IMG/VR virus record: IMGVR_UViG_3300031951_000003 | Coordinates: 1 to 64,000 of that record | Strand: one strand, 5' to 3' | Length of the DNA: 64,000 nucleotides | Part shown: piece after piece, positions 1 to 26,706 of the stretch | Layout: the number at the start of each line of letters is the position of its first letter | How positions within the stretch are numbered: the first letter of the stretch is position 1 | The notes under the pieces: model-generated | What the model saw: only the letters and a program-made list of their open reading frames with translations | The model's database searches: none | What the model was told of the DNA's origin: nothing | Position numbers and translations under genes: made by a program

Positions 1-347
1 GTTCCAGAAGTTCCTGACGAACCACTTGAACCAGATGAGCCAGATGTTCCACTTGTTCCAGATGAGCCAGATGTTCCACTTGTTCCAGATGAACCTGAAC
101 TTCCAGATGAACCTGATGTTCCGCTTGTTCCAGATGTTCCATTAGTTCCAGAAGTTCCTGACGAACCACTTGAACCAGATGAGCCAGATGTTCCACTTGT
201 TCCAGATGAGCCAGATGTTCCACTTGTTCCAGATGAACCTGAACTTCCAGATGAACCTGATGTTCCGCTTGTTCCAGATGTTCCATTAGTTCCAGAAGTT
301 CCTGACGAACCACTTGAACCAGATGAGCCAGATGTTCCACTTGTCCC
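1..347. repeat. 144-bp tandem repeat (about 2.4 copies) inside the collagen-like gene
   Basis: gttccagaagttcctgacgaacc starts at 1, 145 and 289. Confidence 0.85.
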
Positions 348-3300
348 TGATGAACCTGATGTTCCACTTGTTCCTGATGAACCACTTGAACCTGATGAAC
401 CTGATGTTCCAGATGTTCCATTTGTTCCAGATGTTCCGCTTGAGCCTGAACTTCCCGAAGAACCTGATGTTCCGCTTGTTCCAGAAGAGCCCGATGTTCC
501 ACTTGTTCCTGATGAACCACTCGAACCTGAAGAACCTGATGTTCCGCTTGTTCCTGATGTTCCGTCAGTTCCACTTGAACCTGAACTACCTGAAGAACCC
601 GAAGTTCCGCTTGTCCCTGAACTACCTGAAGAACCTGAAGTTCCGCTAGTTCCACTCGAACCTGAACTTCCCGAAGAACCTGAAGTTCCGCTAGTTCCAG
701 ATGTTCCGTTTGTTCCAGATGTTCCGCTTGAACCTGAACTTCCACTTGAACCAGATGTTCCACTTGTTCCCGATGAACCCGATGTTCCAGACGTTCCAGA
801 AGAACCTGAGCTTCCTGAAGAACCTGAAGTTCCGCTAGTTCCAGATGTTCCGTTTGTTCCACTTGTTCCAGAAGAGCCTGAGGAACCACTTGAGCCTGAG
901 GTTCCAGATGAACCTGATGTTCCGCTTGTTCCAGAAGAGCCAGATGAACCACTTGAACCAGATGTTCCACTTGTTCCAGATGTTCCGTTCGTTCCAGATG
1001 TTCCTGATGAACCACTTGAACCGCTTGAACCAGATGTTCCACTAGTACCAGAGGAGCCTGATGTTCCACTTGTGCCCGATGAACCTGAACTACCAGAAGA
1101 ACCTGATGTTCCGCTAGTTCCAGATGTACCATTTGTGCCAGATGTTCCGCTCGAACCTGAGCTACCCGAAGAACCTGATGTCCCTGAAGAACCTGAAGTT
1201 CCACTTGTTCCCGATGAACCAGATGAGCCACTAGAGCCAGATGTTCCGCTTGTTCCCGATGTTCCGTTTGTTCCAGAAGTCCCAGATGAACCACTTGAAC
1301 CTGAAGAACCTGAAGTTCCGCTCGTTCCCGAAGAACCTGAAGAACCTGATGTTCCGCTAGTTCCAGATGAACCACTTGAACCTGAAGAACCTGAAGTTCC
1401 GCTAGTTCCAGAAGTTCCATTTGTTCCAGATGTTCCTGAAGAACCTGAACTTCCACTCGAACCAGATGTTCCTGATGTTCCAGATGAACCAGATGTTCCA
1501 CTTGTGCCTGATGAACCTGAGCTACCCGAAGAACCTGAAGTTCCACTTGTTCCTGATGTCCCAGAAGTTCCATTTGTTCCAGAGGTTCCTGATGAACCTG
1601 AGCTACCACTTGAACCTGATGTCCCTGAAGAGCCAGATGTTCCGCTTGTTCCTGATGAACCACTTGAACCTGACGAACCTGATGTTCCACTTGTTCCCGA
1701 TGTTCCGTTTGTTCCTGAGGTCCCTGATGAACCGCTTGAACCAGATGAGCCTGATGTTCCACTTGTTCCAGAAGAACCTGATGTTCCACTTGTTCCAGAA
1801 GAACCTGAAGAACCGCTTGAACCTGATGTCCCTGAAGAGCCAGATGTTCCACTTGTTCCGGAAGAACCTGAAGAACCACTCGAGCCTGAAGTTCCGGAAG
1901 AACCTGATGTTCCAGAAGAACCTGAAGTTCCAGATGAACCTGAAGTTCCAGATGAACCGTTTCCACCTGTTGCACCATCCAAATTGGTTGTCCAACTATT
2001 GAATGTTCCTGTTCCGTTTATTTCCAACACATATAATGTCAATGCTCCTGTCGAAGAATCATAACTTACAACATCTCCATGGAAGTGATTTGCTAATGAA
2101 TTAGAAACAATAAGATGTTGTGCAATTGTATATGATAAACCAGTGCTTGTTGTTAAAGAAGTATTAGCACTTAACGTTAGTGTTGATAAATCAATTGATG
2201 TTGTTGAAGTTCCACTGTATTGTGCACTAATTCCTGATGTTCCAGATGTTCCGTTCGTTCCAGATGTTCCTGATGAGCCACTCGAACCAGATGAACCCGA
2301 TGTTCCGCTAGTTCCTGATGAACCAGATGTTCCGCTAGTTCCAGATGAACCTGAACTTCCTGATGAACCTGAAGTTCCACTCGTCCCAGATGTTCCATCT
2401 GTTCCAGATGTTCCTGAAGAACCACTCGAACCTGATGAACCTGAAGTTCCACTTGTTCCTGAACTACCTGAAGAACCTGAAGTTCCACTTGTCCCTGAAG
2501 AACCAGATGAACCACTTGAACCTGAAGTCCCACTAGTTCCTGATGTTCCATTTGTTCCAGATGTCCCACTCGAGCCTGAACTTCCGCTTGAACCCGATGT
2601 TCCTGAAGAGCCAGATGTTCCGCTAGTCCCAGATGAACCTGAACTTCCCGAAGAACCTGATGTTCCACTTGTTCCAGATGTCCCATCTGTTCCAGATGTT
2701 CCTGATGAACCTGAGCTACCCGAAGAACCAGATGTTCCTGATGAACCAGATGTTCCACTTGTCCCTGATGAACCAGATGAACCGCTCGAACCTGAAGTTC
2801 CGCTTGTTCCTGATGTTCCATCAGTTCCACTTATTCCTGAAGAACCACTTGTTCCCGAACTTCCTGATGAACCATCAAGGCCATTTAATAAAATCCAACC
2901 ACTAAGTGAAGATGGTTCATTTGTATTATTATTTATAGTTGATTGGTATGAAAATAAACCATCTATAACCATATCGCCATCCATATAAGTTGTTCCCGAT
3001 ACATAAGCTCCTTTGAATGGAGATGTTCCTGATGAACCTGAAGTTCCAGATGAGCCACTTGTTCCTGATGTTCCGTTTACTCCACTTAATCCACTAGAAC
3101 CACTCGAGCCTGATGTCCCATCAGTCCCTGAAGAACCACTTGAACCTGATGTTCCGTCTATTCCACTAGTTCCAGAAGAACCTGATGTTCCACTTGAGCC
3201 TGAAGAACCTGAGCTACCAGATGAACCTGATGTTCCACTTGTGCCTGAAGAACCTGAGCTACCAGATGAACCTGATGTTCCACTTGTTCCTGAACTACCA

Positions 3301-5417
3301 TCTGTTCCACTTGAGCCTGAAGAACCTGAGCTACCAGATGAACCTGATGTTCCACTAGTTCCTGATGAACCACTTGAACCTGAGGTTCCGCTAGTTCCCG
3401 AAGTGCCGTCTGTCCCACTTGAGCCAGATGAACCTGAAGTTCCACTAGTTCCCGAAGTGCCGTCTGTCCCACTTGTTCCAGAAGAACCTGATGTTCCACT
3501 TGTGCCTGAAGAACCACTTGAACCTGATGTTCCGTCTATTCCACTAGTTCCAGAAGAACCTGATGTTCCACTTGAGCCTGAAGAACCTGAGCTACCAGAT
3601 GAACCTGATGTTCCACTAGTTCCTGAAGAACCATCTGTTCCACTGGAACCAGATGAACCTGATGTTCCACTAGTTCCTGAAGAACCATCTGTTCCACTAG
3701 AACCAGATGAACCTGATGTTCCACTTGTGCCTGAAGAACCTGAGCTACCAGATGAACCCGATGTTCCACTAGTTCCTGAAGTTCCGTCCATTCCGCTAGT
3801 TCCTGAAGAACCACTTGAACCTGATGTTCCGCTAGTTCCCGAAGTGCCGTCTGTCCCACTTGAGCCAGATGAACCTGAAGTTCCACTAGTTCCCGAAGTG
3901 CCGTCTGTCCCACTTGTTCCAGAAGAACCTGATGTTCCACTTGTGCCTGAAGAACCACTTGAACCTGATGTCCCACTTGTTCCTGAAGTGCCGTCTATTC
4001 CGCTAGTTCCTGAACTACCGTCTGTTCCACTTGAGCCTGAAGAACCTGAGCTACCAGATGAACCTGATGTTCCACTAGTTCCTGAAGAACCATCTGTTCC
4101 ACTGGAACCAGATGAACCTGATGTTCCACTAGTTCCTGAAGAACCATCTGTTCCACTAGAACCAGATGAACCTGATGTTCCACTTGTGCCTGAAGAACCT
4201 GAGCTACCAGATGAACCCGATGTTCCACTAGTTCCTGAAGTTCCGTCCATTCCGCTAGTTCCTGAAGAACCACTTGAACCTGATGTTCCGCTAGTTCCTG
4301 AAGTTCCATCAATACCACTAGTTCCTGAAGTTCCATCAATACCACTAGTTCCTGAAGAACCTGATGTTCCATCGATACCACTTGTTCCAGAAGTTCCATC
4401 TAATCCGCTTGTTCCTGAAGTTCCATCAATACCACTAGTTCCTGAAGTTCCATCGATACCACTTGTTCCTGATGAACCTGATGTTCCATCGATACCACTT
4501 GTTCCTGATGAACCTGATGTTCCACTTGTTCCCGACGAACCACTTGAGCCTGAAGTTCCACTAATTCCTGAAGTTCCAGATGTTCCGTCTATTCCGCTAG
4601 TCCCAGATGTTCCGTCTATTCCGCTAGTCCCAGATGTTCCGTCTATTCCGCTAGTTCCTGATGTTCCATCTGTTCCACTGGAACCAGATGAACCTGATGT
4701 TCCACTAGTTCCTGAAGAACCATCTGTTCCACTAGAACCAGATGAACCTGAAGAACCTGATGTCCCATCAATTCCACTTGTTCCTGATGTCCCATCAATT
4801 CCACTAGTCCCTGATGTTCCGTCTAAACCGCTTGTTCCAGAAGAACCAGATGTTCCATCTAATCCACTTGTTCCTGATGTCCCATCAATTCCACTAGTTC
4901 CTGAGGTTCCATCAATTCCACTAGTTCCTGAGGTTCCATCTATGCCACTTGAACCAGACGTTCCGTCTACTCCACTTGTTCCTGAAGTGCCATCTATTCC
5001 AGATGTTCCACTCGAACCAGAAGTTCCGGATGTTCCGTCTAATCCGCTTGTTCCTGAAGTTCCATCAATTCCACTAGTTCCTGATGTTCCGTCTATTCCG
5101 CTAGTTCCAGAAGAGCCTGATGTTCCGTCTAAACCACTTGTTCCTGAAGTGCCATCTACCCCAGATGTTCCACTCGAACCAGAAGTTCCGTTGATACCAC
5201 TTGAGCCAGAAGTCCCGTCGATTCCTGATGAACCACTTGAACCAGATGTTCCACTAGTCCCTGATGTTCCTCCTGTTATACTTTCCGTCAAGGCTGAAAA
5301 CGTAATTTGCCCCGAAGTTCCTGATGTGCCTCCAGTATAGTCTGTAACTATATATAACCTATCGTCTGGGGCTGCCGATAGGACTATAGGTAAATCCGTT
5401 ATTCTTGTTGTTGCCAT
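1..5417 (-). CDS. Giant collagen-like (Gly-X-X, Ser/Thr-rich) fibre protein, >1805 aa, 3' end outside the window; absent from the ORF track
   Basis: ATG at 5417. Hand translation gives MATTRITDLPIVLSAAPDDRLYIVTDY... then GTS/GSS/GID/GLD/GTN triplets. The frame is the same at base 3-5 and stays open through the non-repeat inserts at about 2877-3020 and 1970-2230. Pro at every third residue of the + strand shadow ORFs implies Gly at every third codon on the - strand. TATTTAT lies 5 nt upstream of the ATG. Confidence 0.92.
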   Translation of the reverse strand, partial: MATTRITDLPIVLSAAPDDRLYIVTDYTGGTSGTSGQITFSALTESITGGTSGTSGTSGSSGSSGIDGTSGSSGINGTSGSSGTSGVDGTSGTSGLDGTSGSSGTSGIDGTSGTSGIDGTSGTSGLDGTSGTSGSSGTSGIDGTSGTSGVDGTSGSSGIDGTSGTSGIDGTSGTSGIDGTSGTSGLDGTSGSSGTSGLDGTSGTSGIDGTSGTSGIDGTSGSSGSSGSSGTDGSSGTSGTSGSSGSSGTDGTSGTSGIDGTSGTSGIDGTSGTSGIDGTSGTSGISGTSGSSGSSGTSGTSGSSGTSGIDGTSGSSGTSGIDGTSGTSGIDGTSGTSGLDGTSGTSGIDGTSGSSGTSGIDGTSGTSGIDGTSGTSGTSGSSGSSGTSGMDGTSGTSGTSGSSGSSGSSGTSGTSGSSGSSGTDGSSGTSGTSGSSGSSGTDGSSGTSGTSGSSGSSGSSGSSGTDGSSGTSGIDGTSGTSGTSGSSGSSGTSGTSGSSGTSGTDGTSGTSGTSGSSGSSGTDGTSGTSGTSGSSGSSGTSGMDGTSGTSGTSGSSGSSGSSGTSGTSGSSGSSGTDGSSGTSGTSGSSGSSGTDGSSGTSGTSGSSGSSGSSGSSGTSGSSGTSGIDGTSGSSGSSGTSGTSGSSGTSGTDGTSGTSGTSGSSGSSGTDGTSGTSGTSGSSGSSGTSGTSGSSGSSGSSGSSGTDGSSGTSGTSGSSGSSGSSGTSGTSGSSGSSGSSGSSGTSGSSGTSGIDGTSGSSGSSGTDGTSGSSGSSGLSGVNGTSGTSGSSGTSGSSGTSPFKGAYVSGTTYMDGDMVIDGLFSYQSTINNNTNEPSSLSGWILLNGLDGSSGSSGTSGSSGISGTDGTSGTSGTSGSSGSSGSSGTSGTSGSSGTSGSSGSSGSSGTSGTDGTSGTSGTSGSSGSSGSSGTSGTSGSSGTSGSSGSSGSSGTSGTNGTSGTSGTSGSSGSSGSSGTSGTSGSSGSSGTSGTSGSSGSSGSSGTSGTDGTSGTSGTSGSSGSSGSSGTSGTSGSSGTSGTSGSSGSSGSSGTSGTNGTSGTSGISAQYSGTSTTSIDLSTLTLSANTSLTTSTGLSYTIAQHLIVSNSLANHFHGDVVSYDSSTGALTLYVLEINGTGTFNSWTTNLDGATGGNGSSGTSGSSGTSGSSGTSGSSGTSGSSGSSGSSGTSGTSGSSGTSGSSGSSGSSGTSGTSGSSGTSGTSGSSGSSGSSGTSGTNGTSGTSGTSGSSGSSGSSGTSGTSGSSGTSGSSGSSGSSGTSGTNGTSGTSGTSGTSGSSGSSGSSGTSGTSGSSGTSGTSGSSGSSGSSGTSGTNGTSGTSGTSGSSGSSGSSGTSGTSGSSGSSGTSGTSGSSGSSGSSGTSGTNGTSGTSGTSGSSGSSGSSGTSGTSGSSGTSGSSGSSGSSGTSGTNGTSGTSGTSGSSGSSGSSGTSGTSGSSGTSGTSGSSGSSGSSGTSGTNGTSGTSGTSGSSGSSGSSGTSGTSGSSGTSGSSGSSGSSGTSGTNGTSGTSGTSGSSGSSGSSGTSGTSGSSGTSGTSGSSGSSGSSGTSGTNGTSGTSGTSGSSGSSGSSGTSGTSGSSGSSGTSGTSGSSGSSGSSGTDGTSGTSGTSGSSGSSGSSGTSGTSGSSGTSGTSGSSGSSGSSGTSGTNGTSGTSGSSGSSGSSGTSGTSGSSGTSGTSGSSGSSGSSGTSGTNGTSGTSGTSGSSGSSGSSGTSGTSGSSGTSGTSGSSGSSGSSGTSGTNGTSGTSGTSGSSGSSGSSGTSGTSGSSGTSGTSGSSGSSGSSGTSG
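3127..4298. repeat. Nested exact internal duplications in the collagen-like gene
   Basis: 3565-3839 = 4024-4298 (offset 459); 3385-3530 = 3826-3971 (offset 441); about 3127-3238 = 3505-3616 (offset 378). Confidence 0.8.
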
Positions 5418-5422
5418 AGCTT

Positions 5423-5429
5423 ATAAATA
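5423..5429 (-). promoter_or_regulatory. TATTTAT upstream element (putative phage late promoter)
   Basis: 5 nt before the collagen-like gene ATG. Confidence 0.65.
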
Positions 5430-5455
5430 TTTTCTATTAATCTTTTTTATTTGGT

Positions 5456-6943
5456 TTAACATGGTTGCCATAGTCCTCCGACAACAAATCCATCACTATC
5501 TATTTGCCAATATCCTGTGAGAGAGTCGGTGCTGTTGGTATACCAATAATTATTCCCGTTGAAAGGCGTATTGAATGAACTGTCTGCAAAGAATCTCGTT
5601 GCACTATACCAATCATTCGATGGACTGTAAATTGTTTGACCCAACGTTTGTGGGTCTATACATATTGGTTGTGTTGTTTCCCCTGATGAAACTAAGAATG
5701 ATGTAATTTCTTGTTGAGCACCAATTGGGTCACCATTTTGAGCAATTAATTCTTGACCATCTTGAGTTATAATTAAAATCTCAAATACGGATGGAGTTGC
5801 TGTTGGTGAAGGAGTAAACGAAGGGGTTGGTGTATTAGTTTCTGTTGGAGTTGGTGTGTTAGTTTCTGTTGGAGTTGGTGTGTTAGTTTCTGTTGGAGTA
5901 GGAGTCGGAGATATCAAACATCCGTTAGGGTCCGAACTTGTGATTAGACCTGCTCCGCCTGTAACTCTATACCAAGCAACACCGTTGGAATAGTATCCGT
6001 CAGGTGCTGGTGTTGTAAGAGCCGAATCAGTATATAAAGTTTCCCCAATGTTAGGTCCAGGTCCATCTCCAGGTCCACTGTAGAAGTTAGTTGGTGATGA
6101 GTAAAAATTACCACACGATGTTAATGAGCTAGATAAATCATAACCTAATGAATATTCCCAATATGCTCTTGAAGCTGTAGGTGTTGTTGTCGGTGTTGCG
6201 GTTGGAGTTTCAGTTTGCGTAGGTGTTTGTGTTGGAGTCTCAGTATTTGTTGGGGTTGGAGTCTCTGTAGGCGTCTCGCTTGGTGTTACAGATGGTGTTG
6301 GTGTGTTAGTTTCAGTTGGAGTTTGAGTTGGTGTCTCACCAGGTGTTGCGGTAGGTGATTCTGTAGGTGTTTGTGATGGGGTTTCGGTTGGAGTTCCCGT
6401 CTGTGTTGGTGTAGGAGTTTCAGAAGTAGAAGGGGTCGGTGTAGGAGTTGTTGTTGGTGTCTCCGTTTGTGTTGGGGTCGGCGATTCTGTTGCAGTTGGT
6501 GTTTGACCAGGGCTTGCAGTTATACTTGGAGTTGGTGTTTGTGTCTGAGTTTCAGTTGGAGTTTGTGTTGGAGTCTCTGAAGTTGTTGGAGTCTGTGTTG
6601 TTGTTGGTGTTTCTGTAGGTGTAGAATTAGGGGTTCCTGTATTTGTTGGTGTAGGTGTAAACGTAGGTGTTACAGTAGGAGTAGGTGTAGGTGTAGGGGT
6701 AACGCATTCAAATGTAATAACAACTCCGTTGAACATTTCGGTTCTTGTCTGTGCAGAGGCATAAAGAGTTGCGGCTGAAAGGTAGGTCGAAGTCCCATAA
6801 TAGATATCGAATGGACCTAAGGCATTAGAATTCTGAGATAATCTTACAATGTAAGTGACACATCCCGTAACCGAGACCTGTTGCGTAACTACTGTATTAC
6901 AACCTTCAGCAGTATTGACACAAAAAATATTATAAAGGGACAT
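5456..6943 (-). CDS. Pro/Thr-rich stalk virion/adhesin protein with two related small aromatic- and Cys-containing domains
   Basis: ORF track 495 aa. Long (PT)n/TETPT tracts separate a small N-terminal domain from the domains ...[28 protein letters not shown]... and ...[19 protein letters not shown]...YWQIDSDG. Confidence 0.75.
5826..5900. repeat. 24-bp tandem repeat (3 copies) encoding PTPTETNT
   Basis: Unit gttggagttggtgtgttagtttct repeated directly. Confidence 0.8.
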
Positions 6944-7015: not shown

Positions 7016-7342
7016 TCATGTACAAATAATATTGAATCCACATACAGCATTTTGAATGTCTATATTTACAACACAACTCTCGAGCTCAACTGTAATATTG
7101 AAAGTACAACCAAATGTACAATCTAGTATTTTTACTGACTCACATCCATTTGCATCAACCAAACGTAACATGATTTCAGGTGCGGTCTGAAATATTGTAG
7201 GAATAGTTGTATTGTAATAAACAGTTGGTGGAACTCCACTAATTGTACCAAGTAAAAACTGATTATTTCCGTATATGTCGGATATAAAAGCTTGTATTGG
7301 AAAAGTGCCCCCTGTGATTTCTGTTATTCTTACCTGAACCAT
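7016..7342 (-). CDS. Small hypothetical structural protein (single beta-sandwich, SprB-like C-terminal motif)
   Basis: The ATG at 7342 overlaps the upstream stop (TAATG) and is preferred over the track's TTG at 7354. Motif LRLVDANGCE. Confidence 0.7.
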   Translation of the reverse strand: MVQVRITEITGGTFPIQAFISDIYGNNQFLLGTISGVPPTVYYNTTIPTIFQTAPEIMLRLVDANGCESVKILDCTFGCTFNITVELESCVVNIDIQNAVCGFNIICT

Positions 7343-9480
7343 TATGTTAAACAAATTATATCATAAACAATCGACAACTCCACAACAATTTCTTGACCAT
7401 TCAATGAATTGTTTGCCGGGTTAGTTGCAATTGTTATTTGGTTGTTTATTTGGTCTATTGTTACAGTCAAAATTCCTGGTATGGAAAGTAGTAGACTCTT
7501 TATAGTATCATACCATAAATTATCACCCGGCGGATTGTTCAGAGTCGTTGCTGTGAAGAAAGTGCTTGATGCACTCAACCCCGCTGGGTTGACATTGACT
7601 TTAGCTGTGAATATTGCAGAAATCAAATCACAGTTTGTATTGTCTTGCGTCAAATCAGCGTAACCCTCGTTTAACATTTGTAGTAAACCGAGTTTAGTTG
7701 GGGAATCTATGTTAAAGATTTCTTCTCCCATAACATAACACTGATAAGATGTATAGTTGGTGTCACAGGTAATTGTTGTTGAGCGTGAAAGTGAACATCC
7801 ATTTGCATCAACAATAGAAAGACTGTATGTTCCTCCTGTCAAATTGTAAACTTCAATTTGTTGAGGGTTAGATGGGACGTTATTTGACCAATTGAATTGG
7901 AATGGTGGTGTGCCCGAAGTGATGAATGCGGTAATTTGACCATCGTTTCCTGAGCCACAATTAATACTATATAAACTAAAATCTAAGTTGTCTCCTTTTG
8001 GGATGAAAATTGTTTGAGTTTGTTGACATCCCGTTGAGTCAGTAACAGTAACAACATGGTTTCCAAAAGTTAAGTTATTAAATGTTACCGCTGTTAAATT
8101 TGTATCAACAACATTCAATATTCCATCAACTGAATAATCCAATGGTAGAGTATATCCTGGTGATGTAGTAATTCTTACACTTCCGTTGTTTTGATTACAC
8201 GTTGTTCCTGTGATTTCTGTTGAAAGTGTGAATTTATTAATTGCCAATATTATCACTTCTTGACTAAATTGGCATCCTGTAGAATCCTCAACAAATACTG
8301 AGTAAGTGTCCGCAGATAAATTCTCAAAGGTTTGAATTTGTTGTTGTCCTACAATAATTTTTTGGTTTCCTCCGTCGCCAACCAAGGTGTAGGTAAAGGG
8401 ACCTTGTCCTCCTATAACTGTGACAGTTATCAATCCATCATTACTTGAACAATAAGAATTAGTTCCAACAACACTTACAGAACTCATCCCGTTTGGTGTT
8501 AGTAAAGTAGTCCCCGTGAATATTTGACACAGTCCAGCATCTGTGACTGAGAAATTGTAATCACCAGCAGATAATCCTGATATCGTAAAATCTTGAGCAT
8601 ATGATATGAGAACTTGGCCTGTTGACGCGGAGTAATAATATGGTTGACTTCCACCTGTTATTGTGAGAGTAATTGAGCCATCGCTTTGGAAACAACTTGG
8701 ATTGGTTTCTGTTGTGAAAAACGCACCCATTTGGTCGACGTTGACGACAGCAGCATCTTTTATGTTTACACAACCAAAACCATCTTTAACTTCAACCGAA
8801 TATAATCCTTCAGTCAATCCTGTTGCAGTTGCACCTGTCTGACCATTAGACCACAAATAAGTAAAAGGTCCTTGTCCCGTTAGTCCCGTGACCATTATCT
8901 TACCAATCGGGGTTCCTCCACAACTCGAATTAGGTATGGAATATAAACCGTAGTTGGTGAGAAGAGATTGTTCAACGATAAAACTTTGGCTAAAACCTGA
9001 GCATCCACCTAAATCACTAACGGCCAAGTAATATGTTCCGGCCGAAAGATTTTCAAAAATTACGGTTGGGTTGCTTGAAAGGAAAGTTTGAACAAGTGTT
9101 CCGTCACCTGAGAAGACAGAATAATTTGCAGAAGAATAAATCGTATTAGAGGAACCAGTAACAGAACCATTGTTTTCAGCACAAGTGGTGTTCTGAACAC
9201 CGAGAACACTACAACACACTCCACTCGAAATAGGTATGTTAACATTAATTTCTTGATTTGTTGGTAAAGTGCTATCATTCACAGTCATTAGGACGACTGA
9301 ACTAAATAATCCTGATTTGGTTACTGGCGCATTTTCAGCTAATGTAACCGTCGGATAATAAGGGTCAACAAATTGGACGGTATATGGTTCTATACCACCT
9401 GAGAAAGAGATTTGGAATGCACCGCTTCCGTTATTTTGACAATCCCCTGTTACTAATAATGTATAATCAAATAATGCCAT
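7342..9480 (-). CDS. SprB-repeat-containing virion/adhesin protein
   Basis: About 7 repeats of the type DG.IT.T.TGG..PY.Y.WS......NL.AG.Y.V.V.D..GC, e.g. DGQITAFITSGTPPFQFNWSNN...NLTGGTYSLSIVDANGCS. Confidence 0.8.
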   Translation of the reverse strand: MALFDYTLLVTGDCQNNGSGAFQISFSGGIEPYTVQFVDPYYPTVTLAENAPVTKSGLFSSVVLMTVNDSTLPTNQEINVNIPISSGVCCSVLGVQNTTCAENNGSVTGSSNTIYSSANYSVFSGDGTLVQTFLSSNPTVIFENLSAGTYYLAVSDLGGCSGFSQSFIVEQSLLTNYGLYSIPNSSCGGTPIGKIMVTGLTGQGPFTYLWSNGQTGATATGLTEGLYSVEVKDGFGCVNIKDAAVVNVDQMGAFFTTETNPSCFQSDGSITLTITGGSQPYYYSASTGQVLISYAQDFTISGLSAGDYNFSVTDAGLCQIFTGTTLLTPNGMSSVSVVGTNSYCSSNDGLITVTVIGGQGPFTYTLVGDGGNQKIIVGQQQIQTFENLSADTYSVFVEDSTGCQFSQEVIILAINKFTLSTEITGTTCNQNNGSVRITTSPGYTLPLDYSVDGILNVVDTNLTAVTFNNLTFGNHVVTVTDSTGCQQTQTIFIPKGDNLDFSLYSINCGSGNDGQITAFITSGTPPFQFNWSNNVPSNPQQIEVYNLTGGTYSLSIVDANGCSLSRSTTITCDTNYTSYQCYVMGEEIFNIDSPTKLGLLQMLNEGYADLTQDNTNCDLISAIFTAKVNVNPAGLSASSTFFTATTLNNPPGDNLWYDTIKSLLLSIPGILTVTIDQINNQITIATNPANNSLNGQEIVVELSIVYDIICLT

Positions 9481-9485: not shown

Positions 9486-12464
9486 TTAACAATTTATGCT
9501 TATGTTAATACATACGTTTAGTTTGACTGTTTCATTCATGTTTCTTGGTGTGCATGTCGAATTAGTTATTGATAAATTATTTCCATTTAGGAAATATGTA
9601 AACCCATAATCGTAGACTGCTGGTAGATATTGAATCAAAGCATTTCTCCAATTTGAATTTGTTGGAACATCCGTGAATCCATACCCTGTGTAGAAAGGTT
9701 GTTGTATAATTTTTTGTCCCGCAATTTCCAAATCAACATACCAATTTGTTTCAACTGAACTTTGAACACAATCGTTTAAGGTTAATACTTGTGCTTCGAG
9801 CATTATGTTTAGTCTATTTGCTAAAATCGATTGGAAGTTTGATACATTTGTATCACCATTTAACCAAGGATATATGTTGAAGTCAACATATTCTGTTTGA
9901 CATGTGTAATCAAAAATGTTTGTTATTATAAAACAAGGCTCAACTGGCACAGGAATTATTTCACAACCTCTTTGTCTTCTATAAACGTATTTTTGTCTGT
10001 GTAGTATTGAGTTTTCGAGTCTTGAACCTGTATTCCATATTGTGGTTGCAGGTATCATTTGCTCTACTAACTTCATCCACCACGGACCCAATCCGTTGAT
10101 GTAGTCGATTAGTTTTTGATACGTATATTTGTTGTTTGGTATACCCACTGTTTGTTCTGATTGGATATACTTCCACCAAACCGATTGAAGAGTTGGATAT
10201 CCTCCTGTTTTACCATCAGTGATATATTGTCTGTTTCTAGTATTAATCATATTCTCCCAAAAAGTTTGGTAGAATTCGAAGAATGTTTTCTTTTTTGGTT
10301 CGGGTTTGATAAAAGTTGAGTCGACTCCACCTGGAACTGGATATCCAATTGTCAGACCTGATTCAGGAATCGGGTAGTCGTATTTTCTTGAAGAAACCCA
10401 AACGTCGTAAACAAGTCCTTGTGAAGCATTCAAAAACAAATCTATGTTTTTAACATTCAATACGAGTTTTTCATTGTCCGCATAATAATAAGCGTTGAAA
10501 TTAGCATCCCTTGAAACTCTTATCTTGTCATCCTCTTCAAGCCACGACTTATTATTGTCAACAACTTTTTTAAGTTTGAATCCCTCGGTCATATAAGGAA
10601 AATCTCTGAACCTATCGAGATATTTTTGACCATATGTAAATGGTTGTAGTTGAGTTTGAATATCGTAGTTCTGACCTGTATAGATTTGTCCTGTAATTTG
10701 AACCTCATCTGGACTTCTATGTTGTGGTGTGCTTTCATACCAACCAGCACCCAATTGGAAGAAATAAGATTCCGTATTTACGGGAGCCTTAGGAAATCCT
10801 TGAGCGTCTATTGGATAATCATCTAGATTTATCTGAACATCTTGATAGGTGTCAACAGTTGTGAAGGCTGTAAAGGTTTTTCCTTTTATTTTATATGTAG
10901 AACCTGGTAGATAAGCCGGTGTGTTTTGAACATAAGTTCCACCTGTTATGGCCGCATATTGTGTGTCGAACTGTTCCATGTTGATTTTTTGGTCAGCCAA
11001 ATAGATGTGCTCGTTGAATTCTATTAACGACTCGGGTGCACCAATCAATCTCATCATAAACTCAACACTTCGTCTCGTTCCTTTTGATTTGAAAAGGTAT
11101 GCTGAGTTGAGAATCAAATTCCTATAAAATGCGTAGTTGATTTCAGTTGGTGTAAGGGCTCTCGCATAACCTGGATATGAAGGTGTTTGTGTATTTCCAA
11201 AAATCGAATCTAAAAAGTCCGTATCAGTAATAGGTGAAAAATTTGAACTCCATCCCAAGGTTTGAGATAGGTTAACTAACAATTGAGATGGGATGTCATT
11301 ACCAACATTATAATTTACAGAGTTCATAAACGCTAAAGCGTCGATGAAGTTTTTGACTTGGTCAAAACTTCTTCCGTAAATTTGAAAAATCTTTTCGGCT
11401 TTCCTTCCTAATGTATCAAATTCTTTCAATGAATCTGAAACAAAAAATCTTGAAATTAAATTTGTTTTATATGAATCAAGATTTACCGCAATTGTTTCCA
11501 ATTGTGTCAAATACTCTTCGAATAAGAAAGAACGAATATCTAAATTCCATGGACCGTCCTTAGGCCATGTTACAGATTGGTTGTTTGTATAAAACTGACC
11601 CCCTTCCGTTTGCTGTGGTATTTGGAACACAGCTGTGTATTCAGGTCTAACCAATCTATTCATCAGAAACTTTTCAACCTCATCCAAACTCTCAGCAAAA
11701 ATTCTGTCAACTATGAAATCATTCGGTCTTATTTGATACTCTTGAATACTTGTTGTTGCGGTTTGTCCAAAAGGTGCACCGGAAACAGTGAATTTGATTA
11801 TACCACTTGATAATGTTTGAGAGGGTGTAAATGAAATAACTTTGAAAATATCATCATTGATTGATACGCAGTAATCTAAGTAAGTATTGTAGAGATTCCT
11901 ATAAGGTGACACACCAATTTCTCTCATGTTTAGGTTTGTGGCCGCACTTACAGAATAATCAACGTCAAATGGGTTTTTGATTCTATTAACACTTACTTCA
12001 AAACTTGTTTCATCATAAATCGGGTCATACGCGACATTCTGTGCTGTAAATCCAGTTAGGAAATCATCGTTCAAAAATTGAATATCTAAAGAAGCAGGAA
12101 ATACACTTATAATATGAGTAATTGATACTTGAAATCTTTTTGATAGTGAACCATATAATGTGAAATTTGTAACCTGAGACAAATCATAGTTCGGGTAAAC
12201 CCTGAATTGAGTCGCTTGAATTCTTCTACTCTCAGCAAGTGTATCAACATCAAGATAATCCAAATCTATAGGCTCCGAAAAAGCACCAACATTAAATCTA
12301 CGATTCACTTTCTCCACAATAGAAGTTGTGAATTCGAAGTTACCTTGCGTGAGACCGCCCCCTTCAACTGTCTGCAATCCTACAATATTGTCAGAGAAGG
12401 TAGCCGCCCCACTTCCTGGTCTTGGCGGATAGAAAAATTTAGTTGTTCTTCTTGATGTCGCCAT
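9486..12464 (-). CDS. Baseplate wedge protein (P2 gpI / T4 gp7-like domain)
   Basis: 992 aa. Motif AYLFKSKGTRRSVEFMMRLIG resembles the Y..KGT..SI..L...G signature. Lies in the baseplate cluster. Confidence 0.6.
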   Translation of the reverse strand: MATSRRTTKFFYPPRPGSGAATFSDNIVGLQTVEGGGLTQGNFEFTTSIVEKVNRRFNVGAFSEPIDLDYLDVDTLAESRRIQATQFRVYPNYDLSQVTNFTLYGSLSKRFQVSITHIISVFPASLDIQFLNDDFLTGFTAQNVAYDPIYDETSFEVSVNRIKNPFDVDYSVSAATNLNMREIGVSPYRNLYNTYLDYCVSINDDIFKVISFTPSQTLSSGIIKFTVSGAPFGQTATTSIQEYQIRPNDFIVDRIFAESLDEVEKFLMNRLVRPEYTAVFQIPQQTEGGQFYTNNQSVTWPKDGPWNLDIRSFLFEEYLTQLETIAVNLDSYKTNLISRFFVSDSLKEFDTLGRKAEKIFQIYGRSFDQVKNFIDALAFMNSVNYNVGNDIPSQLLVNLSQTLGWSSNFSPITDTDFLDSIFGNTQTPSYPGYARALTPTEINYAFYRNLILNSAYLFKSKGTRRSVEFMMRLIGAPESLIEFNEHIYLADQKINMEQFDTQYAAITGGTYVQNTPAYLPGSTYKIKGKTFTAFTTVDTYQDVQINLDDYPIDAQGFPKAPVNTESYFFQLGAGWYESTPQHRSPDEVQITGQIYTGQNYDIQTQLQPFTYGQKYLDRFRDFPYMTEGFKLKKVVDNNKSWLEEDDKIRVSRDANFNAYYYADNEKLVLNVKNIDLFLNASQGLVYDVWVSSRKYDYPIPESGLTIGYPVPGGVDSTFIKPEPKKKTFFEFYQTFWENMINTRNRQYITDGKTGGYPTLQSVWWKYIQSEQTVGIPNNKYTYQKLIDYINGLGPWWMKLVEQMIPATTIWNTGSRLENSILHRQKYVYRRQRGCEIIPVPVEPCFIITNIFDYTCQTEYVDFNIYPWLNGDTNVSNFQSILANRLNIMLEAQVLTLNDCVQSSVETNWYVDLEIAGQKIIQQPFYTGYGFTDVPTNSNWRNALIQYLPAVYDYGFTYFLNGNNLSITNSTCTPRNMNETVKLNVCINISINC

Positions 12465-13372
12465 TAACTAGTAATTGATGTAAAATTCTTACTGAAATCA
12501 ATATTATCACCTCTGTTCTGTCTAACCTCATATAATAATGCATTGAATTGGTCTCTAATTTCATACAAGTTATACTGTCTGTAAATGTTATTTTGACTAT
12601 CATAGATGGTGTAGATTCCATCGTCGATAGATTTGGTTTGATTACCATAAAGTGCAATTGCAAGAGATGATATATCGTATTCGACCATTTCAATTTCAAC
12701 AGTTACAGGATTGAAAAAGGTGTTTGTTATTATTATTCCTTGGTCAGGTTGTCCAATATACGGTGTTGCATTTGGTCTGTTTGTTGGTGATGAAGATGGT
12801 GATACCGTCAGGAATAACAAGTTAGAATTGTTATCAACGTATCTATATCTGATTGACTTTTGAGATGTATTAACCTCATTTGCAACCACCGCCTCACAGT
12901 AGAAACAAGAAGTTACAACTCTGAAGAAGTTTGGAATCTTCGAACCATCAGGATTAAGATATTCGATTCTGAATCCCACCAACCCTTGTGGAACAAATTT
13001 GTTAAGGAATTGTGGGTCAACGTTGTTTAAGTCAATCACAAGTCCTTTGACATTAGGTAATGCACTTAAAACACCACAATCTGTGATTATTGTTCTTATC
13101 TGAGCTGGTCTCAAATATAGAGTATAGATTCCCAAAGCATTGAACTGATTTGCAGGAAGAGTTAGATTATATAATCCTCCTATTACTTCAACCCCTGAGT
13201 TTCCTCCTGTTTCAGTGTTTTCGAAATATGGTCTCAATATTGTTTGAGCATCGAGTTTACTTAAAACGAAGTTATCTGTGGCGTCTCTTGTCGGGGTATA
13301 ATTCATTATGATTTCAACATCTTCTGGTGAAACATCTGAAGGTCTTATCGTGCCATATGAGCCAATTGCCAT
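12464..13372 (-). CDS. Hypothetical virion structural protein
   Basis: 302-aa ORF in the baseplate cluster. TATTTAT 16 nt upstream. Confidence 0.7.
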   Translation of the reverse strand: MAIGSYGTIRPSDVSPEDVEIIMNYTPTRDATDNFVLSKLDAQTILRPYFENTETGGNSGVEVIGGLYNLTLPANQFNALGIYTLYLRPAQIRTIITDCGVLSALPNVKGLVIDLNNVDPQFLNKFVPQGLVGFRIEYLNPDGSKIPNFFRVVTSCFYCEAVVANEVNTSQKSIRYRYVDNNSNLLFLTVSPSSSPTNRPNATPYIGQPDQGIIITNTFFNPVTVEIEMVEYDISSLAIALYGNQTKSIDDGIYTIYDSQNNIYRQYNLYEIRDQFNALLYEVRQNRGDNIDFSKNFTSITS

Positions 13373-13388
13373 ATAAAATTATTTTTCT

Positions 13389-13395
13389 ATAAATA
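13389..13395 (-). promoter_or_regulatory. TATTTAT upstream element
   Basis: 16 nt before ATG 13372. Confidence 0.65.
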
Positions 13396-13397
13396 GT

Positions 13398-14504
13398 TTA
13401 TGTATCTTTTTTAATGACATTAAAAAAACCATAACCATAGTTTATCATGTCACCCAAGTTGTCCACCTCACCAAGTCTTTGGACCCTTTCGTAAGCACTG
13501 TTCTTCCCTCTCTCAACAAATACGTTTGTTTGAATCTGAGGTTGGTCCATTACTTTAAGCAAAGTTTCATTTTTTGTTATCGGCACCGCGGTTATGTTAT
13601 ATTCGGTTAAACCAGATGATGGTTGATAGAAAATTGTAGTTCCATCTCCATAGTCAATATAGTTGGTGTCTTGGATAGTGTAAGCAGTAAAACCATTTCC
13701 AACATTAGTAATTGAACCCCACAGCACCCCATTATTTATGATTGGTAAATTGATTCTTTGATTAATTGTTAAATTACCGTAAGGTTTCAATTCTGTGATT
13801 CTAGACCTACTTACCCCTGACACCGTAAACGGAATTGTTATATATTTCGAACTCACTTGGTCTTGAACATTGTTTTCTGCATCACCTGAAAATATATAAT
13901 CATATGAAACAGGGGTTCCAATCCAATTACCAAATGATGGTGCAAAGAAACATTCACCTTGTGGATTGAATATTGTTACTTTACTGTAAGGAACTGAAAT
14001 TGTTTTAGTGACAGTTGTTACACCCCAAGGGTTGATTTGTTCCAACGTGATTTTGTAATCTTTTGTAGTTCCAACTGGCGGAGTGGGATATGTATGGTTT
14101 ATTGAATTGGGTGCATAATTTGTAATTGATTGTTTTGGTGAATTATCACCCCAATCGACTCTGTAGGCAGAGAGCTGCAAGAAATTTTGGAATTGGTCCG
14201 AAGTATTATAAACATAATATGTCATTGGACTTCCAGTAGTTGCTGAGAACAAAAAATTCGCCACAACATCTTTCTGTAATACCGCTCCGTCAAAAGGACT
14301 ATAATAGCCACAATCAACCGCACTTTGTCTAAGTAATATCGGAACCGACACCTCCTTCAATAACGAGGACCCACCAGGTCCTGAACTCACAACCTTGGTC
14401 ATTGCAGAATATACACCGACTGAAGTATTATTGTAATTTACAACAGCAATATCCCCTTTTACGGTCTCAGGTGAAATAATAACCTTATAGTAATCTTGAC
14501 TCAT
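13398..14504 (-). CDS. Hypothetical structural protein with a PKD-like Ig domain
   Basis: 368 aa. YRVDWGDNSP...INHTY resembles the PKD W.FGDG...HTY motif. ATGA overlap with the upstream gene. Confidence 0.6.
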   Translation of the reverse strand: MSQDYYKVIISPETVKGDIAVVNYNNTSVGVYSAMTKVVSSGPGGSSLLKEVSVPILLRQSAVDCGYYSPFDGAVLQKDVVANFLFSATTGSPMTYYVYNTSDQFQNFLQLSAYRVDWGDNSPKQSITNYAPNSINHTYPTPPVGTTKDYKITLEQINPWGVTTVTKTISVPYSKVTIFNPQGECFFAPSFGNWIGTPVSYDYIFSGDAENNVQDQVSSKYITIPFTVSGVSRSRITELKPYGNLTINQRINLPIINNGVLWGSITNVGNGFTAYTIQDTNYIDYGDGTTIFYQPSSGLTEYNITAVPITKNETLLKVMDQPQIQTNVFVERGKNSAYERVQRLGEVDNLGDMINYGYGFFNVIKKDT

Positions 14505-22161: not shown

Positions 22162-22175
22162 CAACTAGTTTTTCA

Positions 22176-26645: not shown

Positions 26646-26672
26646 TTTTTGTAGTTTTTGTTGTGTAAGTTT

Positions 26673-26702: not shown

Positions 26703-26705
26703 ATA
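26699..26705 (-). promoter_or_regulatory. TATTTAT upstream element
   Basis: 53 nt before the nrdJ ATG. Confidence 0.5.
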
Positions 26706-26706
26706 T

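What the first reader, a model, noticed from the sequence alone, without database searches (positions are those of the whole stretch)
1..5417. Hidden >1800-aa proline-free Gly-Ser/Thr collagen-like fibre missed by the ORF track
Seen: one open - strand frame from ATG 5417 to beyond base 1, with Gly at every third residue in three blocks (about 250, 70 and >215 triplets, estimated from coordinates). X and Y positions are almost only Ser/Thr, with some Asn/Asp/Ile/Leu. Pro and basic residues are essentially absent from the repeats. Established: the type I collagen helix has about 338 triplets (about 300 nm), and Ser/Thr-rich, imino-acid-free triplets are poor triple-helix formers in host-guest studies. 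Inference: if extended, the fibre would be about 450 nm or more, longer than the predicted tail. It may need O-glycosylation (as in B. anthracis BclA) or may fold as a polyglycine-II helix bundle (snow-flea antifreeze type) rather than a triple helix.
Basis: partly seen in the sequence, partly recalled or inferred. Interest (0 to 1): 0.72.

Follow-up and report, generated by a model that had tools for sequence, protein, structure and literature searches.

The report
Giant proline-free collagen-like phage tail fibre
The open frame is real: it is the first 1,805 codons of a roughly 1,900-2,200-residue collagen-like fibre gene, probably a tail fibre, of a 321-kb freshwater jumbo phage, and its Gly-Ser/Thr shaft has no proline or basic residues, so it belongs to a repeat class common in metagenomes whose fold has never been tested.

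Summary
**Observation: confirmed.**
- The minus-strand frame from ATG 5417 has no stop to base 1, nor to the end of the contig (at least 1,944 aa).
- Gly sits at every third residue in blocks of 250, 73 and at least 219 triplets. The repeats hold no Pro, Lys or Arg.
- The plus-strand Pro/Glu/Asp ORFs are antisense shadows of the repeat.

**Full gene.** Sibling assemblies of the same phage give 1,899-2,196 aa: a 49-aa N-terminal module, three G-X-Y blocks, two globular islands and a 158-aa C-terminal domain. That domain also ends a "putative tail fiber-like protein" of a Flavobacterium phage. Exact internal repeats of 276-473 nt make the triplet count (521-620) unresolvable from short reads.

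**Context.** The gene ends a conserved baseplate and fibre module and is followed by a strong terminator.

**Interpretation.**
- Most likely it is a trimeric, flexible fibre about 0.45-0.53 µm long. The triple helix itself is not shown.
- A polyglycine-II bundle is disfavoured.
- Glycosylation gains circumstantial support from a phage fucose/glycosyltransferase cluster of at least 10 genes.

**Novelty.** Pro-free Ser/Thr repeats are common in metagenomic fibre proteins, so this is an extreme variant of a known kind.

The parts
1..5417 (-). N-terminal 1,805 codons of the collagen-like fibre gene. The gene continues past base 1. Complete versions in sibling assemblies are 1,899-2,196 aa.
   Evidence: No stop in the window or to the contig end. 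Complete copies are L050:8001-14174 (2,058 aa) and L028 (1,899 aa). Joining the 344-bp terminal overlap of the 321-kb contigs gives 2,196 and 2,148 aa in frame.
5271..5417 (-). N-terminal module, aa 1-49, the presumed attachment end. It is lineage-specific.
   Evidence: It is conserved at 65-100% identity in 31 viral loci and is always followed by GTS/GSS repeats. Only 8 hits were found among 1.84 billion representatives, and the genuine ones are fragments of this family. No Pfam or PHROG match.
3021..5270 (-). G-X-Y block 1: 250 triplets, with many (GTS)(GTS)(G-I/L/V-D) nonapeptides. It is acidic only.
   Evidence: Sibling copies have 199-252 triplets here.
2883..3020 (-). Island 1, aa 800-845: a 46-aa non-repeat insert of unknown fold.
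   Evidence: Identical in all near-identical copies. No Pfam match, and only a weak PHROG tail-fibre match at E 0.015. The resemblance to CBM5/12 is not significant. The plus-frame stops at 2986 and 3004 lie here.
2226..2882 (-). G-X-Y block 2: 73 triplets. This count is the same in every assembly.
1977..2225 (-). Island 2, aa 1065-1147: an 83-aa non-repeat domain of unknown fold.
   Evidence: It is 62-68% identical in six more distant viral contigs. No family match. The plus-frame stops at 2062 and 2086 lie here. An exact 151-nt contig from an RNA library covers 2058-2208.
1..1976 (-). G-X-Y block 3: at least 219 triplets in the window, with a 16-triplet (144-nt) higher-order unit carrying one GTN. 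It is almost uncharged.
   Evidence: Complete copies have 249, 281 or 297 triplets.
5418..5455 (-). 38-nt A/T-rich intergenic spacer before the ATG, with no Shine-Dalgarno-like purine run.
   Evidence: Read directly. Weak Shine-Dalgarno use in Bacteroidota is from my own knowledge.
5456..6943 (-). Upstream neighbour of 495 aa. It is mosaic among relatives and is a candidate adaptor or fibre component.
   Evidence: Matches phrog_15511, function unknown. In relatives only its N-terminal 76 aa or its C-terminal 110-155 aa is conserved.
7342..9480 (-). 712-aa protein with SprB repeats, a virion-structural-like member of the same module.
   Evidence: Pfam SprB PF13573 at 85.8 bits and phrog_26672 'virion structural protein'. 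Its only cellular relatives are two Bacteroidota MAGs, one of them Saprospiraceae.
9486..15433 (-). Four conserved module genes of 992, 302, 368 and 310 aa. They have no family match and are syntenic in all relatives.
   Evidence: The 302-aa protein is 82-92% identical and the 992-aa protein 68-85% identical across 15 relatives.
22256..24094 (-). Baseplate wedge (Baseplate J-like) gene that heads the module.
   Evidence: phrog_219 at 1.6e-21 and Pfam Baseplate_J. It is 27% identical to the annotated baseplate wedge of Flavobacterium phage immuto.
3013..5340 (+). Antisense shadow ORF (775 aa, Pro/Glu/Asp/Val/Leu). It is not a gene. The ORFs at 1072-2064 and 2143-2988 are the same kind of thing.
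   Evidence: The plus frame is broken by stops only inside the non-repeat islands, and its wobble positions coincide with those of the minus frame. See the report for the Ser codon-family argument.

Best explanation
This is the gene for a very long structural fibre of a roughly 321-kb freshwater jumbo myovirus that probably infects a member of the Bacteroidota. The fibre is most probably a tail fibre.

**Proposed mechanism.**
- The 49-residue N-terminal module anchors the protein to the baseplate or fibre complex encoded just upstream. This is inferred from gene order.
- Three chains would be held in register by the 158-residue C-terminal domain and the two globular islands. This is inferred by analogy with other phage collagens.
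- The three G-X-Y stretches would wind into a thin, flexible collagen-type triple helix about 0.45-0.53 µm long in total. This is inferred from the strict Gly periodicity and the X/Y asymmetry and is not shown.
- The C-terminal domain is a module shared with fibre proteins of Flavobacterium and cyanobacterial myoviruses. It would bind the host surface.
- The long flexible shaft would widen the capture radius of a large, slowly diffusing virion in dilute lake water. It would act as a first, reversible tether rather than as the trigger for contraction.
- The shaft has neither imino acids nor charge pairs. Its stability would have to come from Ser/Thr hydration networks and low ambient temperature, possibly helped by O-glycosylation from the phage's own glycan cluster. 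This last point is speculative.
For: **Coding.**
- The frame is open for at least 1,944 codons, while the other frames hold 5-334 stops.
- Ser at Y uses both codon families, TCN 352 and AGY 168. The plus frame would read these as Asp/Glu versus Leu.
- The N-terminus, island 2 and the C-terminal domain are conserved at protein level in other phages.
- The frame closes onto the same C-terminal domain in four independent assemblies.

**Structured rather than disordered.**
- There is no Gly violation in any block.
- Positional asymmetry is near-absolute: Thr 288 at X against 1 at Y, Asp/Asn 0 against 64, hydrophobics 37 against 0.
- Unrelated metagenomic proteins follow the same rule.

**Fibre of the tail module.**
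- The gene is on the same strand as the baseplate J gene and is the last gene after it. A 13-bp-stem terminator lies 16 nt after the stop.
- Synteny is conserved in 15 relatives, with conservation falling towards the fibre.
- The C-terminal domain is 51% identical to the end of an annotated 'putative tail fiber-like protein' and occurs in 50 phage records.

**Phage and host.**
- Sibling contigs of 321 kb are rated 100% complete.
- SprB repeats and Bacteroidota-only cellular relatives of the neighbour gene point to the host.

**Precedent.**
- Phage collagen domains flanked by trimerisation modules form real triple helices (PMC3368898).
- Collagen-like shafts are flexible and poorly suited to signal transmission (bioRxiv 10.64898/2026.04.10.717836).

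**Glycan machinery in the same genome:**
Against: - There is no direct evidence that the protein is made or is in virions. The RNA-library contigs are few, about 2x deep and unstranded.
- The triple helix is untested. Pro and charge pairs, the two documented stabilisers of bacterial collagens (PMC8968730; PMC3368898), are both absent.
- As I recall the Persikov/Brodsky host-guest scale (not checked here), Thr at X and Ser, Asp and Asn at Y are each in their less favourable position.
- No trimerisation domain is recognised by Pfam, and no solved structure matches the C-terminal domain.
- Fibre length is uncertain because repeat copy number cannot be resolved.
- Two of six interior assemblies carry a +1 shift inside the gene.
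- The glycan cluster lies about 77 kb away and could equally serve host-surface modification. Co-occurrence in relatives could not be tested on contigs that are 22-26% complete.
Confidence: 0.6

Rival explanations
1. The shaft is not a triple helix. It is an extended, largely disordered, heavily O-glycosylated Ser/Thr tether, mucin-like, held together only at the globular islands and the C-terminal domain.
For: Ser+Thr make up over 90% of X/Y, with no Pro and no charge pairs. The phage encodes a large glycan cluster. No solved structure contains such a repeat; the PDB matches rest on Gly spacing alone.
Against: Disorder does not need Gly at exactly every third residue for up to 297 consecutive triplets. 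It also does not explain the near-absolute X/Y asymmetry, which unrelated fibre proteins share.
Confidence: 0.18
2. The repeats fold back into polyglycine-II helix bundles, as in snow-flea antifreeze protein or phage S16 gp38, giving a compact or sheet-like domain rather than a long fibre.
For: Gly-rich PPII bundles do occur in phage tail proteins such as S16 gp38, Bxb1 gp33/gp29 and a cyanophage tail spike fibre (PMC13243192). The composition is imino-acid-free.
Against: Known bundles are built from 6-11-residue helices separated by turns and belong to the GGX motif class, whereas GXX is the collagen class. This gene has no turn-like interruptions or register shifts in up to 250-297 triplets and almost no GG. 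The 9-residue and 48-residue higher-order periods carry no turn-former such as Pro or GG.
Confidence: 0.07
3. It is a virion appendage other than a tail fibre, such as a head fibre, neck whisker or decoration filament, with a role in aggregation, particle stabilisation or adhesion to organic matter.
For: No direct evidence places it on the baseplate. The N-terminal module has no known homologue. Several module genes have no family match.
Against: It lies at the end of the baseplate-J-led module with conserved synteny. Its C-terminal domain is shared with proteins annotated or placed as tail fibres. The falling-conservation gradient is typical of host-recognition genes.
Confidence: 0.12
4. The stretch is a non-coding tandem repeat, or the plus-strand Pro/Glu/Asp frame is the real gene.
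For: The plus frame 2 has ORFs of 330, 281 and 775 aa. Its synonymous codon usage fits the genome as well as the minus frame does.
Against: The plus frame has stops in every non-repeat island, while the minus frame has none in 1,944-2,196 codons. The wobble positions of the two frames coincide, which explains the codon-usage tie. TCN/AGY switching at one repeat position keeps Ser only in the minus frame. The non-repeat parts are conserved as minus-frame protein in other phages. All neighbouring genes are on the minus strand.
Confidence: 0.02

Closest known systems
Phage collagen-like tail fibre proteins: the E. coli O157 prophage EPclA-D proteins (Ghosh et al. 2012, PMC3368898), 'Bacteriophage collagen' (Smith et al. 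1998, cited in PMC1079782) and phi24B gp61 (bioRxiv 10.64898/2026.04.10.717836)
   Same: The architecture is an N-terminal attachment part, a long G-X-Y shaft with interruptions and a small C-terminal globular domain, and the gene lies in a tail fibre module. In EPclA the shaft is a real triple helix registered by flanking trimerisation domains. In phi24B the shaft is predicted to be long and flexible.
   Different: EPcl shafts have Pro in about half of the X positions plus Asp/Glu-Lys/Arg pairs. This gene has none of either. The shaft here is far longer, at 521-620 triplets against residues 243-567 in gp61. The N- and C-terminal domains are unrelated, with no PfN or PfC Pfam matches.
Prochlorococcus cyanomyophage P-SSM2 orf28 and similar unnamed metagenomic fibre proteins
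   Same: These are Gly-X-Y repeats with Ser and Thr frequent in X/Y, proposed as tail fibre candidates (PMC1079782). Among 120 long metagenomic collagen-like proteins, 41 have Pro under 1% and Ser+Thr over 80%, with the same X = T/S and Y = S/N/D rule. Several carry the same C-terminal domain: L071, L073 and L074.
   Different: The triplet count here is 2-3 times the largest seen in that list, about 227. Only L073, with at least 748 triplets, exceeds it. None of these proteins has been characterised, so they set the frequency of the type, not its fold.
The three other collagen-like fibre genes of the same phage (L144: 780, 809 and 874 aa)
   Same: Same genome, same strand logic, G-X-Y shafts and Pfam Collagen matches.
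   Different: Those are Gln/Ala-rich with some Pro and end in a Peptidase_S74 intramolecular chaperone domain, PF13884. The giant gene has no S74 domain, no Pro and no Gln-rich triplets.
Bacillus anthracis BclA exosporium glycoprotein
   Same: It is a hydroxy-amino-acid-rich collagen-like filament with a C-terminal globular trimerising domain. Its Thr residues are O-glycosylated (my own knowledge; the BclA 'collagen-like glycoprotein' is cited in PMC3707005).
   Different: BclA repeats are mostly GPT, with Pro at X and Thr at Y. Here Thr is at X, Ser is at Y and Pro is absent. The C-terminal domain here has no recognisable family. Glycosylation here is only a hypothesis.
Gly-rich polyproline-II / polyglycine-II bundles: snow-flea antifreeze protein and phage S16 gp38
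   Same: They are imino-acid-poor, Gly-periodic sequences that adopt PPII conformation, and they occur in phage tail proteins.
   Different: Bundles use short 6-11-residue helices joined by turns and GGX motifs. This gene has hundreds of uninterrupted GXX triplets.

Membership tests
Collagen triple helix repeat (Pfam PF01391) | Gly at every third residue over long uninterrupted runs, with a score above the Pfam gathering threshold | tested here: met
   Runs of 250, 73 and at least 219 triplets without a violation. The score is 711 bits against a cut-off of 27.2.
Collagen triple helix repeat (Pfam PF01391) | Stabilising composition: a substantial imino acid content and/or Asp/Glu-Lys/Arg pairs, as in characterised animal, bacterial and phage collagens | tested here: not met
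   The repeat blocks contain 0 Pro and 0 Lys/Arg. The reference compositions are in PMC8968730 and PMC3368898.
Collagen triple helix repeat (Pfam PF01391) | Three chains actually form a triple helix, shown by trimer state, CD signature and protease resistance | not testable with these tools
This needs recombinant protein.
Collagen triple helix repeat (Pfam PF01391) | A flanking trimerisation or registration domain | tested here: inconclusive
   Non-collagen domains do flank and interrupt the shaft. None matches a known trimerisation family or a solved structure.
Phage tail fibre | The gene lies in the baseplate/tail-fibre module, co-oriented with it | tested here: met
   It is the last gene of a minus-strand run led by the baseplate J gene. 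A terminator follows the stop. Synteny holds in 15 relatives.
Phage tail fibre | Homology to a fibre protein of a studied phage | tested here: inconclusive
   The C-terminal 122 residues are 51% identical to the end of a 'putative tail fiber-like protein' of Flavobacterium phage immuto. That annotation is itself putative, and most other carriers are 'hypothetical'. The PHROGs matches are of unknown function.
Phage tail fibre | Presence in the virion at the baseplate, and a role in adsorption | not testable with these tools
   There is no isolate, proteome or micrograph.
S74-chaperone collagen-like fibres (Peptidase_S74, PF13884) | A C-terminal intramolecular chaperone domain | tested here: not met
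   The 158-aa C-terminal domain has no Pfam match. The domain is present in the phage's three other collagen-like genes.
Gly-rich PPII / polyglycine-II helical bundle (snow-flea antifreeze protein, S16 gp38) | Short PPII helices of 6-11 residues separated by turns, with GGX-type motifs | tested here: not met
   The GXX runs are uninterrupted, with one GG in 574 triplets. The criteria come from PMC13243192.
BclA-type glycosylated collagen-like filament | GPT-type repeats with O-glycosylated Thr | tested here: not met
   There is no Pro, and Thr is at X rather than Y. Glycosylation itself cannot be tested here; the genome does carry the enzymes.

The most novel reading that the evidence does not exclude
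The shaft is a genuine collagen triple helix about half a micron long that contains no imino acids and no charge pairs. It is made stable by O-glycosylation of its roughly 1,100 Ser/Thr residues, carried out by the phage's own GDP-fucose, glycosyltransferase and methyltransferase cluster. That would be a third, glycan-based way to stabilise a collagen helix, and it would be a phage that glycosylates its own host-capture fibre.
Probability: 0.2. Interest if true: 0.75.

Novelty: new variant of a known kind. Interest (0 to 1): 0.48.

Why it matters
- **Collagen biophysics.** Every characterised collagen relies on imino acids, charge pairs or both. This gene and its many unnamed metagenomic relatives have neither, yet they keep perfect Gly periodicity and a strict X/Y code. 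They offer a natural test of whether a triple helix can form from Gly-Thr-Ser and Gly-Ser-Ser alone, with or without glycans.
- **Phage biology.** A flexible fibre of 0.45-0.53 µm on a jumbo phage would be one of the longest host-capture devices proposed. It could help explain how large, slowly diffusing virions find hosts in dilute water.
- **Genome curation.** The gene breaks short-read assemblies. The IMG/VR 'direct terminal repeats' of the 321-kb genomes lie inside it, so they should not be read as physical genome ends.

Tried and rejected
- **Codon usage to choose between the two frames: uninformative.** The wobble positions of the two frames coincide. I used the Ser codon-family test and the stop positions instead.
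- **tblastn of the whole protein against 50,697 phage records: no match**. The low-complexity filter removes the repeats, and the islands are lineage-specific.
- **PDB sequence and profile searches with the C-terminal domain: nothing**.
- **PDB search with shaft pieces: only Gly-periodicity matches to animal collagens and a Pro-containing fibril, 8zxl**.
- **Island 1 as a CBM5/12-like domain (an impression by eye): not supported**.
- **Long-read runs: none was listed for PacBio**.
- **Read laying on two RNA and two DNA runs: too little depth to show transcription, strand or copy number**.
- **Co-occurrence of glycosyltransferases with Ser/Thr-type fibres in five other contigs: 1 of 5, uninformative** because the contigs are 22-26% complete.
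- **A 90-aa ORF just downstream as a fibre chaperone: rejected.** It has no family match and overlaps the terminator.
- **Phage tRNAs for Gly, Ser or Thr: none on the 105-kb contig**.
- **A literature search for 'axial fibril / spindle fibril': led nowhere**.

Full report
**1.

- Translating window 1-5417 on the minus strand gives 1,805 codons without a stop.
- The window is bases 417-64416 of a 105,599-bp IMG/VR viral contig. On that contig the frame stays open for 1,944 codons, up to the contig's first base. The other five frames of the same stretch contain 5 to 334 stops.
- The ORF list omits it only because it does not list ORFs that run off the source.
- Gly occupies every third position in three blocks of 250, 73 and at least 219 triplets.
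- At X the residues are Thr 288, Ser 215, Ile/Leu/Val/Met 37, Ala 1 and Gly 1. At Y they are Ser 477, Asp 48, Asn 16 and Thr 1.
- All four Pro and all three Lys/Arg of the 1,805 residues lie outside the repeats. The repeat blocks of a complete copy contain no Pro and no Lys/Arg.
- Pfam Collagen scores 711 bits.

**2. Which strand codes**

Codon usage cannot decide, because the third codon positions of the two frames coincide and both frames use preferred codons. Four other lines of evidence decide for the minus strand.

- The plus frame has five stops, at window 2062, 2086, 2986, 3004 and 5338. All lie in the non-repeat parts. The plus ORFs are therefore mirror images of the repeat.
- Ser at position Y is written with both codon families, TCN 352 times and AGY 168 times. 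These families are two mutational steps apart. The minus frame reads them as one residue. The plus frame would read them as Asp/Glu in some repeats and Leu in others.
- The non-repeat parts are conserved as minus-frame protein in other phage contigs: the N-terminus at 65-100%, island 2 at 62-68% and the C-terminal domain at 41-60%.
- Every neighbouring gene is on the minus strand.

**3. The whole gene**

Searching IMG/VR with the non-repeat pieces found near-identical contigs.

| Source | Length (aa) | Block 1 | Block 2 | Block 3 |
|---|---|---|---|---|
| L050 (interior of contig) | 2,058 | 252 | 73 | 249 |
| L028 (interior of contig) | 1,899 | 199 | 73 | 249 |
| G001 (321,283 bp, overlap joined) | 2,196 | 250 | 73 | 297 |
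| G002 (321,139 bp, overlap joined) | 2,148 | 250 | 73 | 281 |

- Both interior copies end in the same 158-aa non-repeat domain.
- G001 and G002 are rated 100% complete and begin exactly like the window. Each ends inside the same gene. Joining their 344-bp terminal overlap gives the in-frame ORFs in the table, ending in the same C-terminal domain.
- The 'direct terminal repeat' that IMG/VR reports for these genomes therefore lies inside the collagen repeat.
- The gene holds exact internal direct repeats of 276-473 nt, longer than the reads. The assemblies differ by whole repeat units, for example by 144 nt between G001 and G002. The true count, somewhere in or near 521-620 triplets, cannot be fixed from short reads. 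The differences may be real copy-number variation or assembly collapse.
- Two further assemblies (L023 and L026) each carry a single extra base at a repeat junction. After it the G-X-Y reading continues open in the new frame, to the C-terminal domain in L023 (and in L026 apart from two stops just after the shift). With four intact copies, an assembly or sequencing error, or a rare variant, is more likely than gene decay. Only long reads can say.

**4. Architecture**

- A 49-aa N-terminal module.
- Block 1, rich in (GTS)(GTS)(G-Ile/Leu/Val-Asp) nonapeptides. It has 44 Asp and no base.
- A 46-aa island.
- Block 2.
- An 83-aa island.
- Block 3, with a 16-triplet unit holding one GTN. It is almost uncharged.
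- The 158-aa C-terminal domain.

At 0.286 nm per residue the shaft would measure 447-532 nm in the four complete versions. Ghosh et al. give 2.88 Å per residue for phage collagen domains.

The N-terminal module has no family match. It found only 8 hits among 1.84 billion representative proteins. The three genuine ones are fragments that run straight into GTS/GSS repeats. More distant relatives keep this N-terminus and the repeat type but swap in different globular islands.

**5. Context**

- The gene is the last of a minus-strand run that starts with a baseplate wedge (Baseplate J) gene and includes an SprB-repeat protein with a PHROG 'virion structural protein' match.
- A terminator with a 13-bp stem and a T-run lies 16 nt after the stop codon.
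- The order 368-302-992-SprB712-112-495-fibre is kept in 15 relatives. Identity falls from 82-92% for the 302-aa protein to 47-75% for the SprB protein. The 495-aa neighbour is mosaic, and the fibre has swapped islands. That is the usual gradient towards host-recognition genes.
- The C-terminal domain matches two PHROGs of unknown function at 1e-35 to 1e-40.
- By tblastn it occurs in 50 phage records. In Flavobacterium phage immuto it ends a 588-aa 'putative tail fiber-like protein' (51% identity). In T4-like cyanophages it ends small proteins that sit near tail fibre genes.
- It has no relative among solved structures, by sequence or by profile.
- The baseplate wedge is only 27% identical to that of its nearest cultured phages, so there is no close isolate.
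- The host is probably a Bacteroidota member. The evidence is the SprB repeats, the two Bacteroidota MAGs that are the only cellular relatives of that protein, the Flavobacterium phage affinities and an A/T-rich leader without a Shine-Dalgarno run (the link to Bacteroidota is my own knowledge).
- The phage is present in many freshwater metagenomes from several studies.

**6. How it most likely works**

*Shown:*
- It is a conserved protein-coding gene of the tail module, with a modular fibre-type C-terminus.

*Inferred:*
- Three chains associate through the C-terminal domain and the islands, and the G-X-Y stretches form a collagen-type helix.
- The argument for an ordered helix is the unbroken Gly periodicity plus the near-absolute non-equivalence of X and Y. 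Thr and hydrophobics occur only at X, and Asp and Asn only at Y. Unrelated metagenomic fibre proteins share this rule. A disordered linker would need neither feature.
- The argument against a polyglycine-II bundle is that known bundles are made of 6-11-residue helices joined by turns and belong to the GGX class. GXX is the collagen class (PMC13243192). Nothing in up to 297 consecutive triplets looks like a turn.

*Precedent:*
- Phage collagen domains flanked by trimerisation modules are true triple helices with a melting point of 42 °C (PMC3368898).
- Long collagen-like shafts are flexible, and their authors think them unfit to transmit a triggering signal.
- On this basis I propose a long-range, reversible capture fibre.

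*The weak point is stability:*
- Characterised bacterial and phage collagens use Pro at X and charge pairs or polar hydration networks. This shaft has only the hydroxyl groups.
- As I recall the Persikov/Brodsky host-guest scale, Thr at X and Ser, Asp and Asn at Y are each in their less favourable position. I could not check this in the library, so it is marked as memory.

**7. Glycosylation**

- The same genome, and the window's own contig at about 82.5-94.2 kb, carries a compact cluster. It holds a GT2_5/GT4 fusion, GT2, an FkbM methyltransferase, GT11, a TylF-like methyltransferase, GT10, an epimerase/reductase, GDP-mannose 4,6-dehydratase, GT1 and another GT2.
- GT10 and GT11 are fucosyltransferase families, and the dehydratase/reductase pair is the GDP-fucose route (my own knowledge).
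- A protein with roughly 1,100 Ser/Thr is an obvious candidate substrate, but nothing links the two directly.
- The cluster could instead modify the host surface. A co-occurrence test on other contigs was uninformative.

**8. How unusual it is**

- A search of 5.8 billion proteins with the complete protein found 219 long collagen-like proteins at E ≤ 1e-10. Nearly all are unnamed.
- Of the best 120, 41 have Pro under 1% and Ser+Thr over 80% at X/Y, and many more are Pro-free with about 70% Ser/Thr.
- Other phages join the same C-terminal domain to Pro-free Ser/Thr shafts behind different N-termini. L071 has 465 triplets and L073 at least 748.
- Sullivan et al. noted Ser/Thr-rich Gly-X-Y repeats in a cyanophage tail-fibre candidate in 2005.
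- The repeat type is therefore common but uncharacterised. What stands out here is the size, 2-3 times the triplet count of the listed proteins and well above the roughly 338 triplets of type I collagen. The complete absence of Pro and basic residues and the glycan cluster also stand out.
- The same phage has three further collagen-like fibre genes of the conventional kind: Gln/Ala-rich, with some Pro and with a Peptidase_S74 chaperone end. The giant gene is thus a distinct design within one virion.

**9. Limits**

- Expression is not shown. Two metatranscriptome libraries contain a few exact short contigs on the gene, including 151 nt on island 2. Depth is about 2, there is no strand information, and DNA carry-over is possible.
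- No PacBio run was listed.
I left all folding of this protein aside.
- The claim that the fibre exceeds the tail was not tested, because no tape measure protein was identified. The 1,685-aa neighbour has no family match.

**10. Verdict**

- The collagen-like fibre reading is supported by sequence logic and context, but the fold is unproven.
- The PPII-bundle and plus-strand alternatives are unlikely.
- The glycosylation idea is strengthened but open.
- I rate this a new, extreme variant of a known kind, the phage collagen-like tail fibre.

Noticed in passing
L145:2113-13770 (own contig about 82.5-94.2 kb, outside the window): A compact glycan cluster of at least 10 genes: a GT2_5/GT4 fusion, GT2, an FkbM methyltransferase, GT11, a TylF-like methyltransferase, GT10, an epimerase/reductase, GDP-mannose 4,6-dehydratase, GT1 and GT2. 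A further GT2 lies at about 234.5 kb of the 321-kb genome.
   Followed up: partly
L144:1269-8657 (321-kb genome, about 267.8-275.2 kb): Three tandem collagen-like fibre genes of 780, 809 and 874 aa. They are Gln/Ala-rich with some Pro, and each ends in a Peptidase_S74 chaperone domain. This is a different class from the giant gene.
   Followed up: yes
window 1-344 and the ends of the 321-kb sibling contigs (L029, L059): The 344-bp 'direct terminal repeat' that IMG/VR reports for the complete genomes lies inside the collagen repeat. It marks where the assembly broke, not necessarily a physical genome end.
   Followed up: yes
L023 (about nt 4,746 of the gene) and L026 (about nt 1,236): Two sibling assemblies carry a single extra base at a repeat junction. 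The G-X-Y reading continues in the +1 frame through the rest of the shaft, and in L023 stays open to the C-terminal domain. These are probably errors or rare variants.
   Followed up: partly
window 7342-9480 (-): A 712-aa module protein carries four SprB repeats, the repeat of the Flavobacterium gliding-motility adhesin. Its only cellular relatives are a Saprospiraceae MAG and a Bacteroidota MAG, at 29-31% identity.
   Followed up: partly
window 17107-22164 (-): A 1,685-aa ORF between the baseplate J gene and the fibre module has no PHROG match. The 992, 302, 368, 310 and 580-aa genes after it have neither a PHROG nor a Pfam match.
   Followed up: no
window 24783-28159 (-): A class II (B12-dependent) ribonucleotide reductase and a DnaB-like helicase sit directly next to the baseplate genes on the same strand.
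   Followed up: no
window 1-6000: GC content is 44-48% over the fibre gene against about 35% for the rest of the window, with strongly negative GC skew. This is a consequence of the GGN, TCN and ACN codons.
   Followed up: no
L073 (IMGVR_UViG_3300034418_007450): Another phage contig holds an even longer Pro-free Ser/Thr collagen-like ORF with the same C-terminal domain. It has at least 2,493 aa and at least 748 triplets and is cut at the contig end.
   Followed up: no
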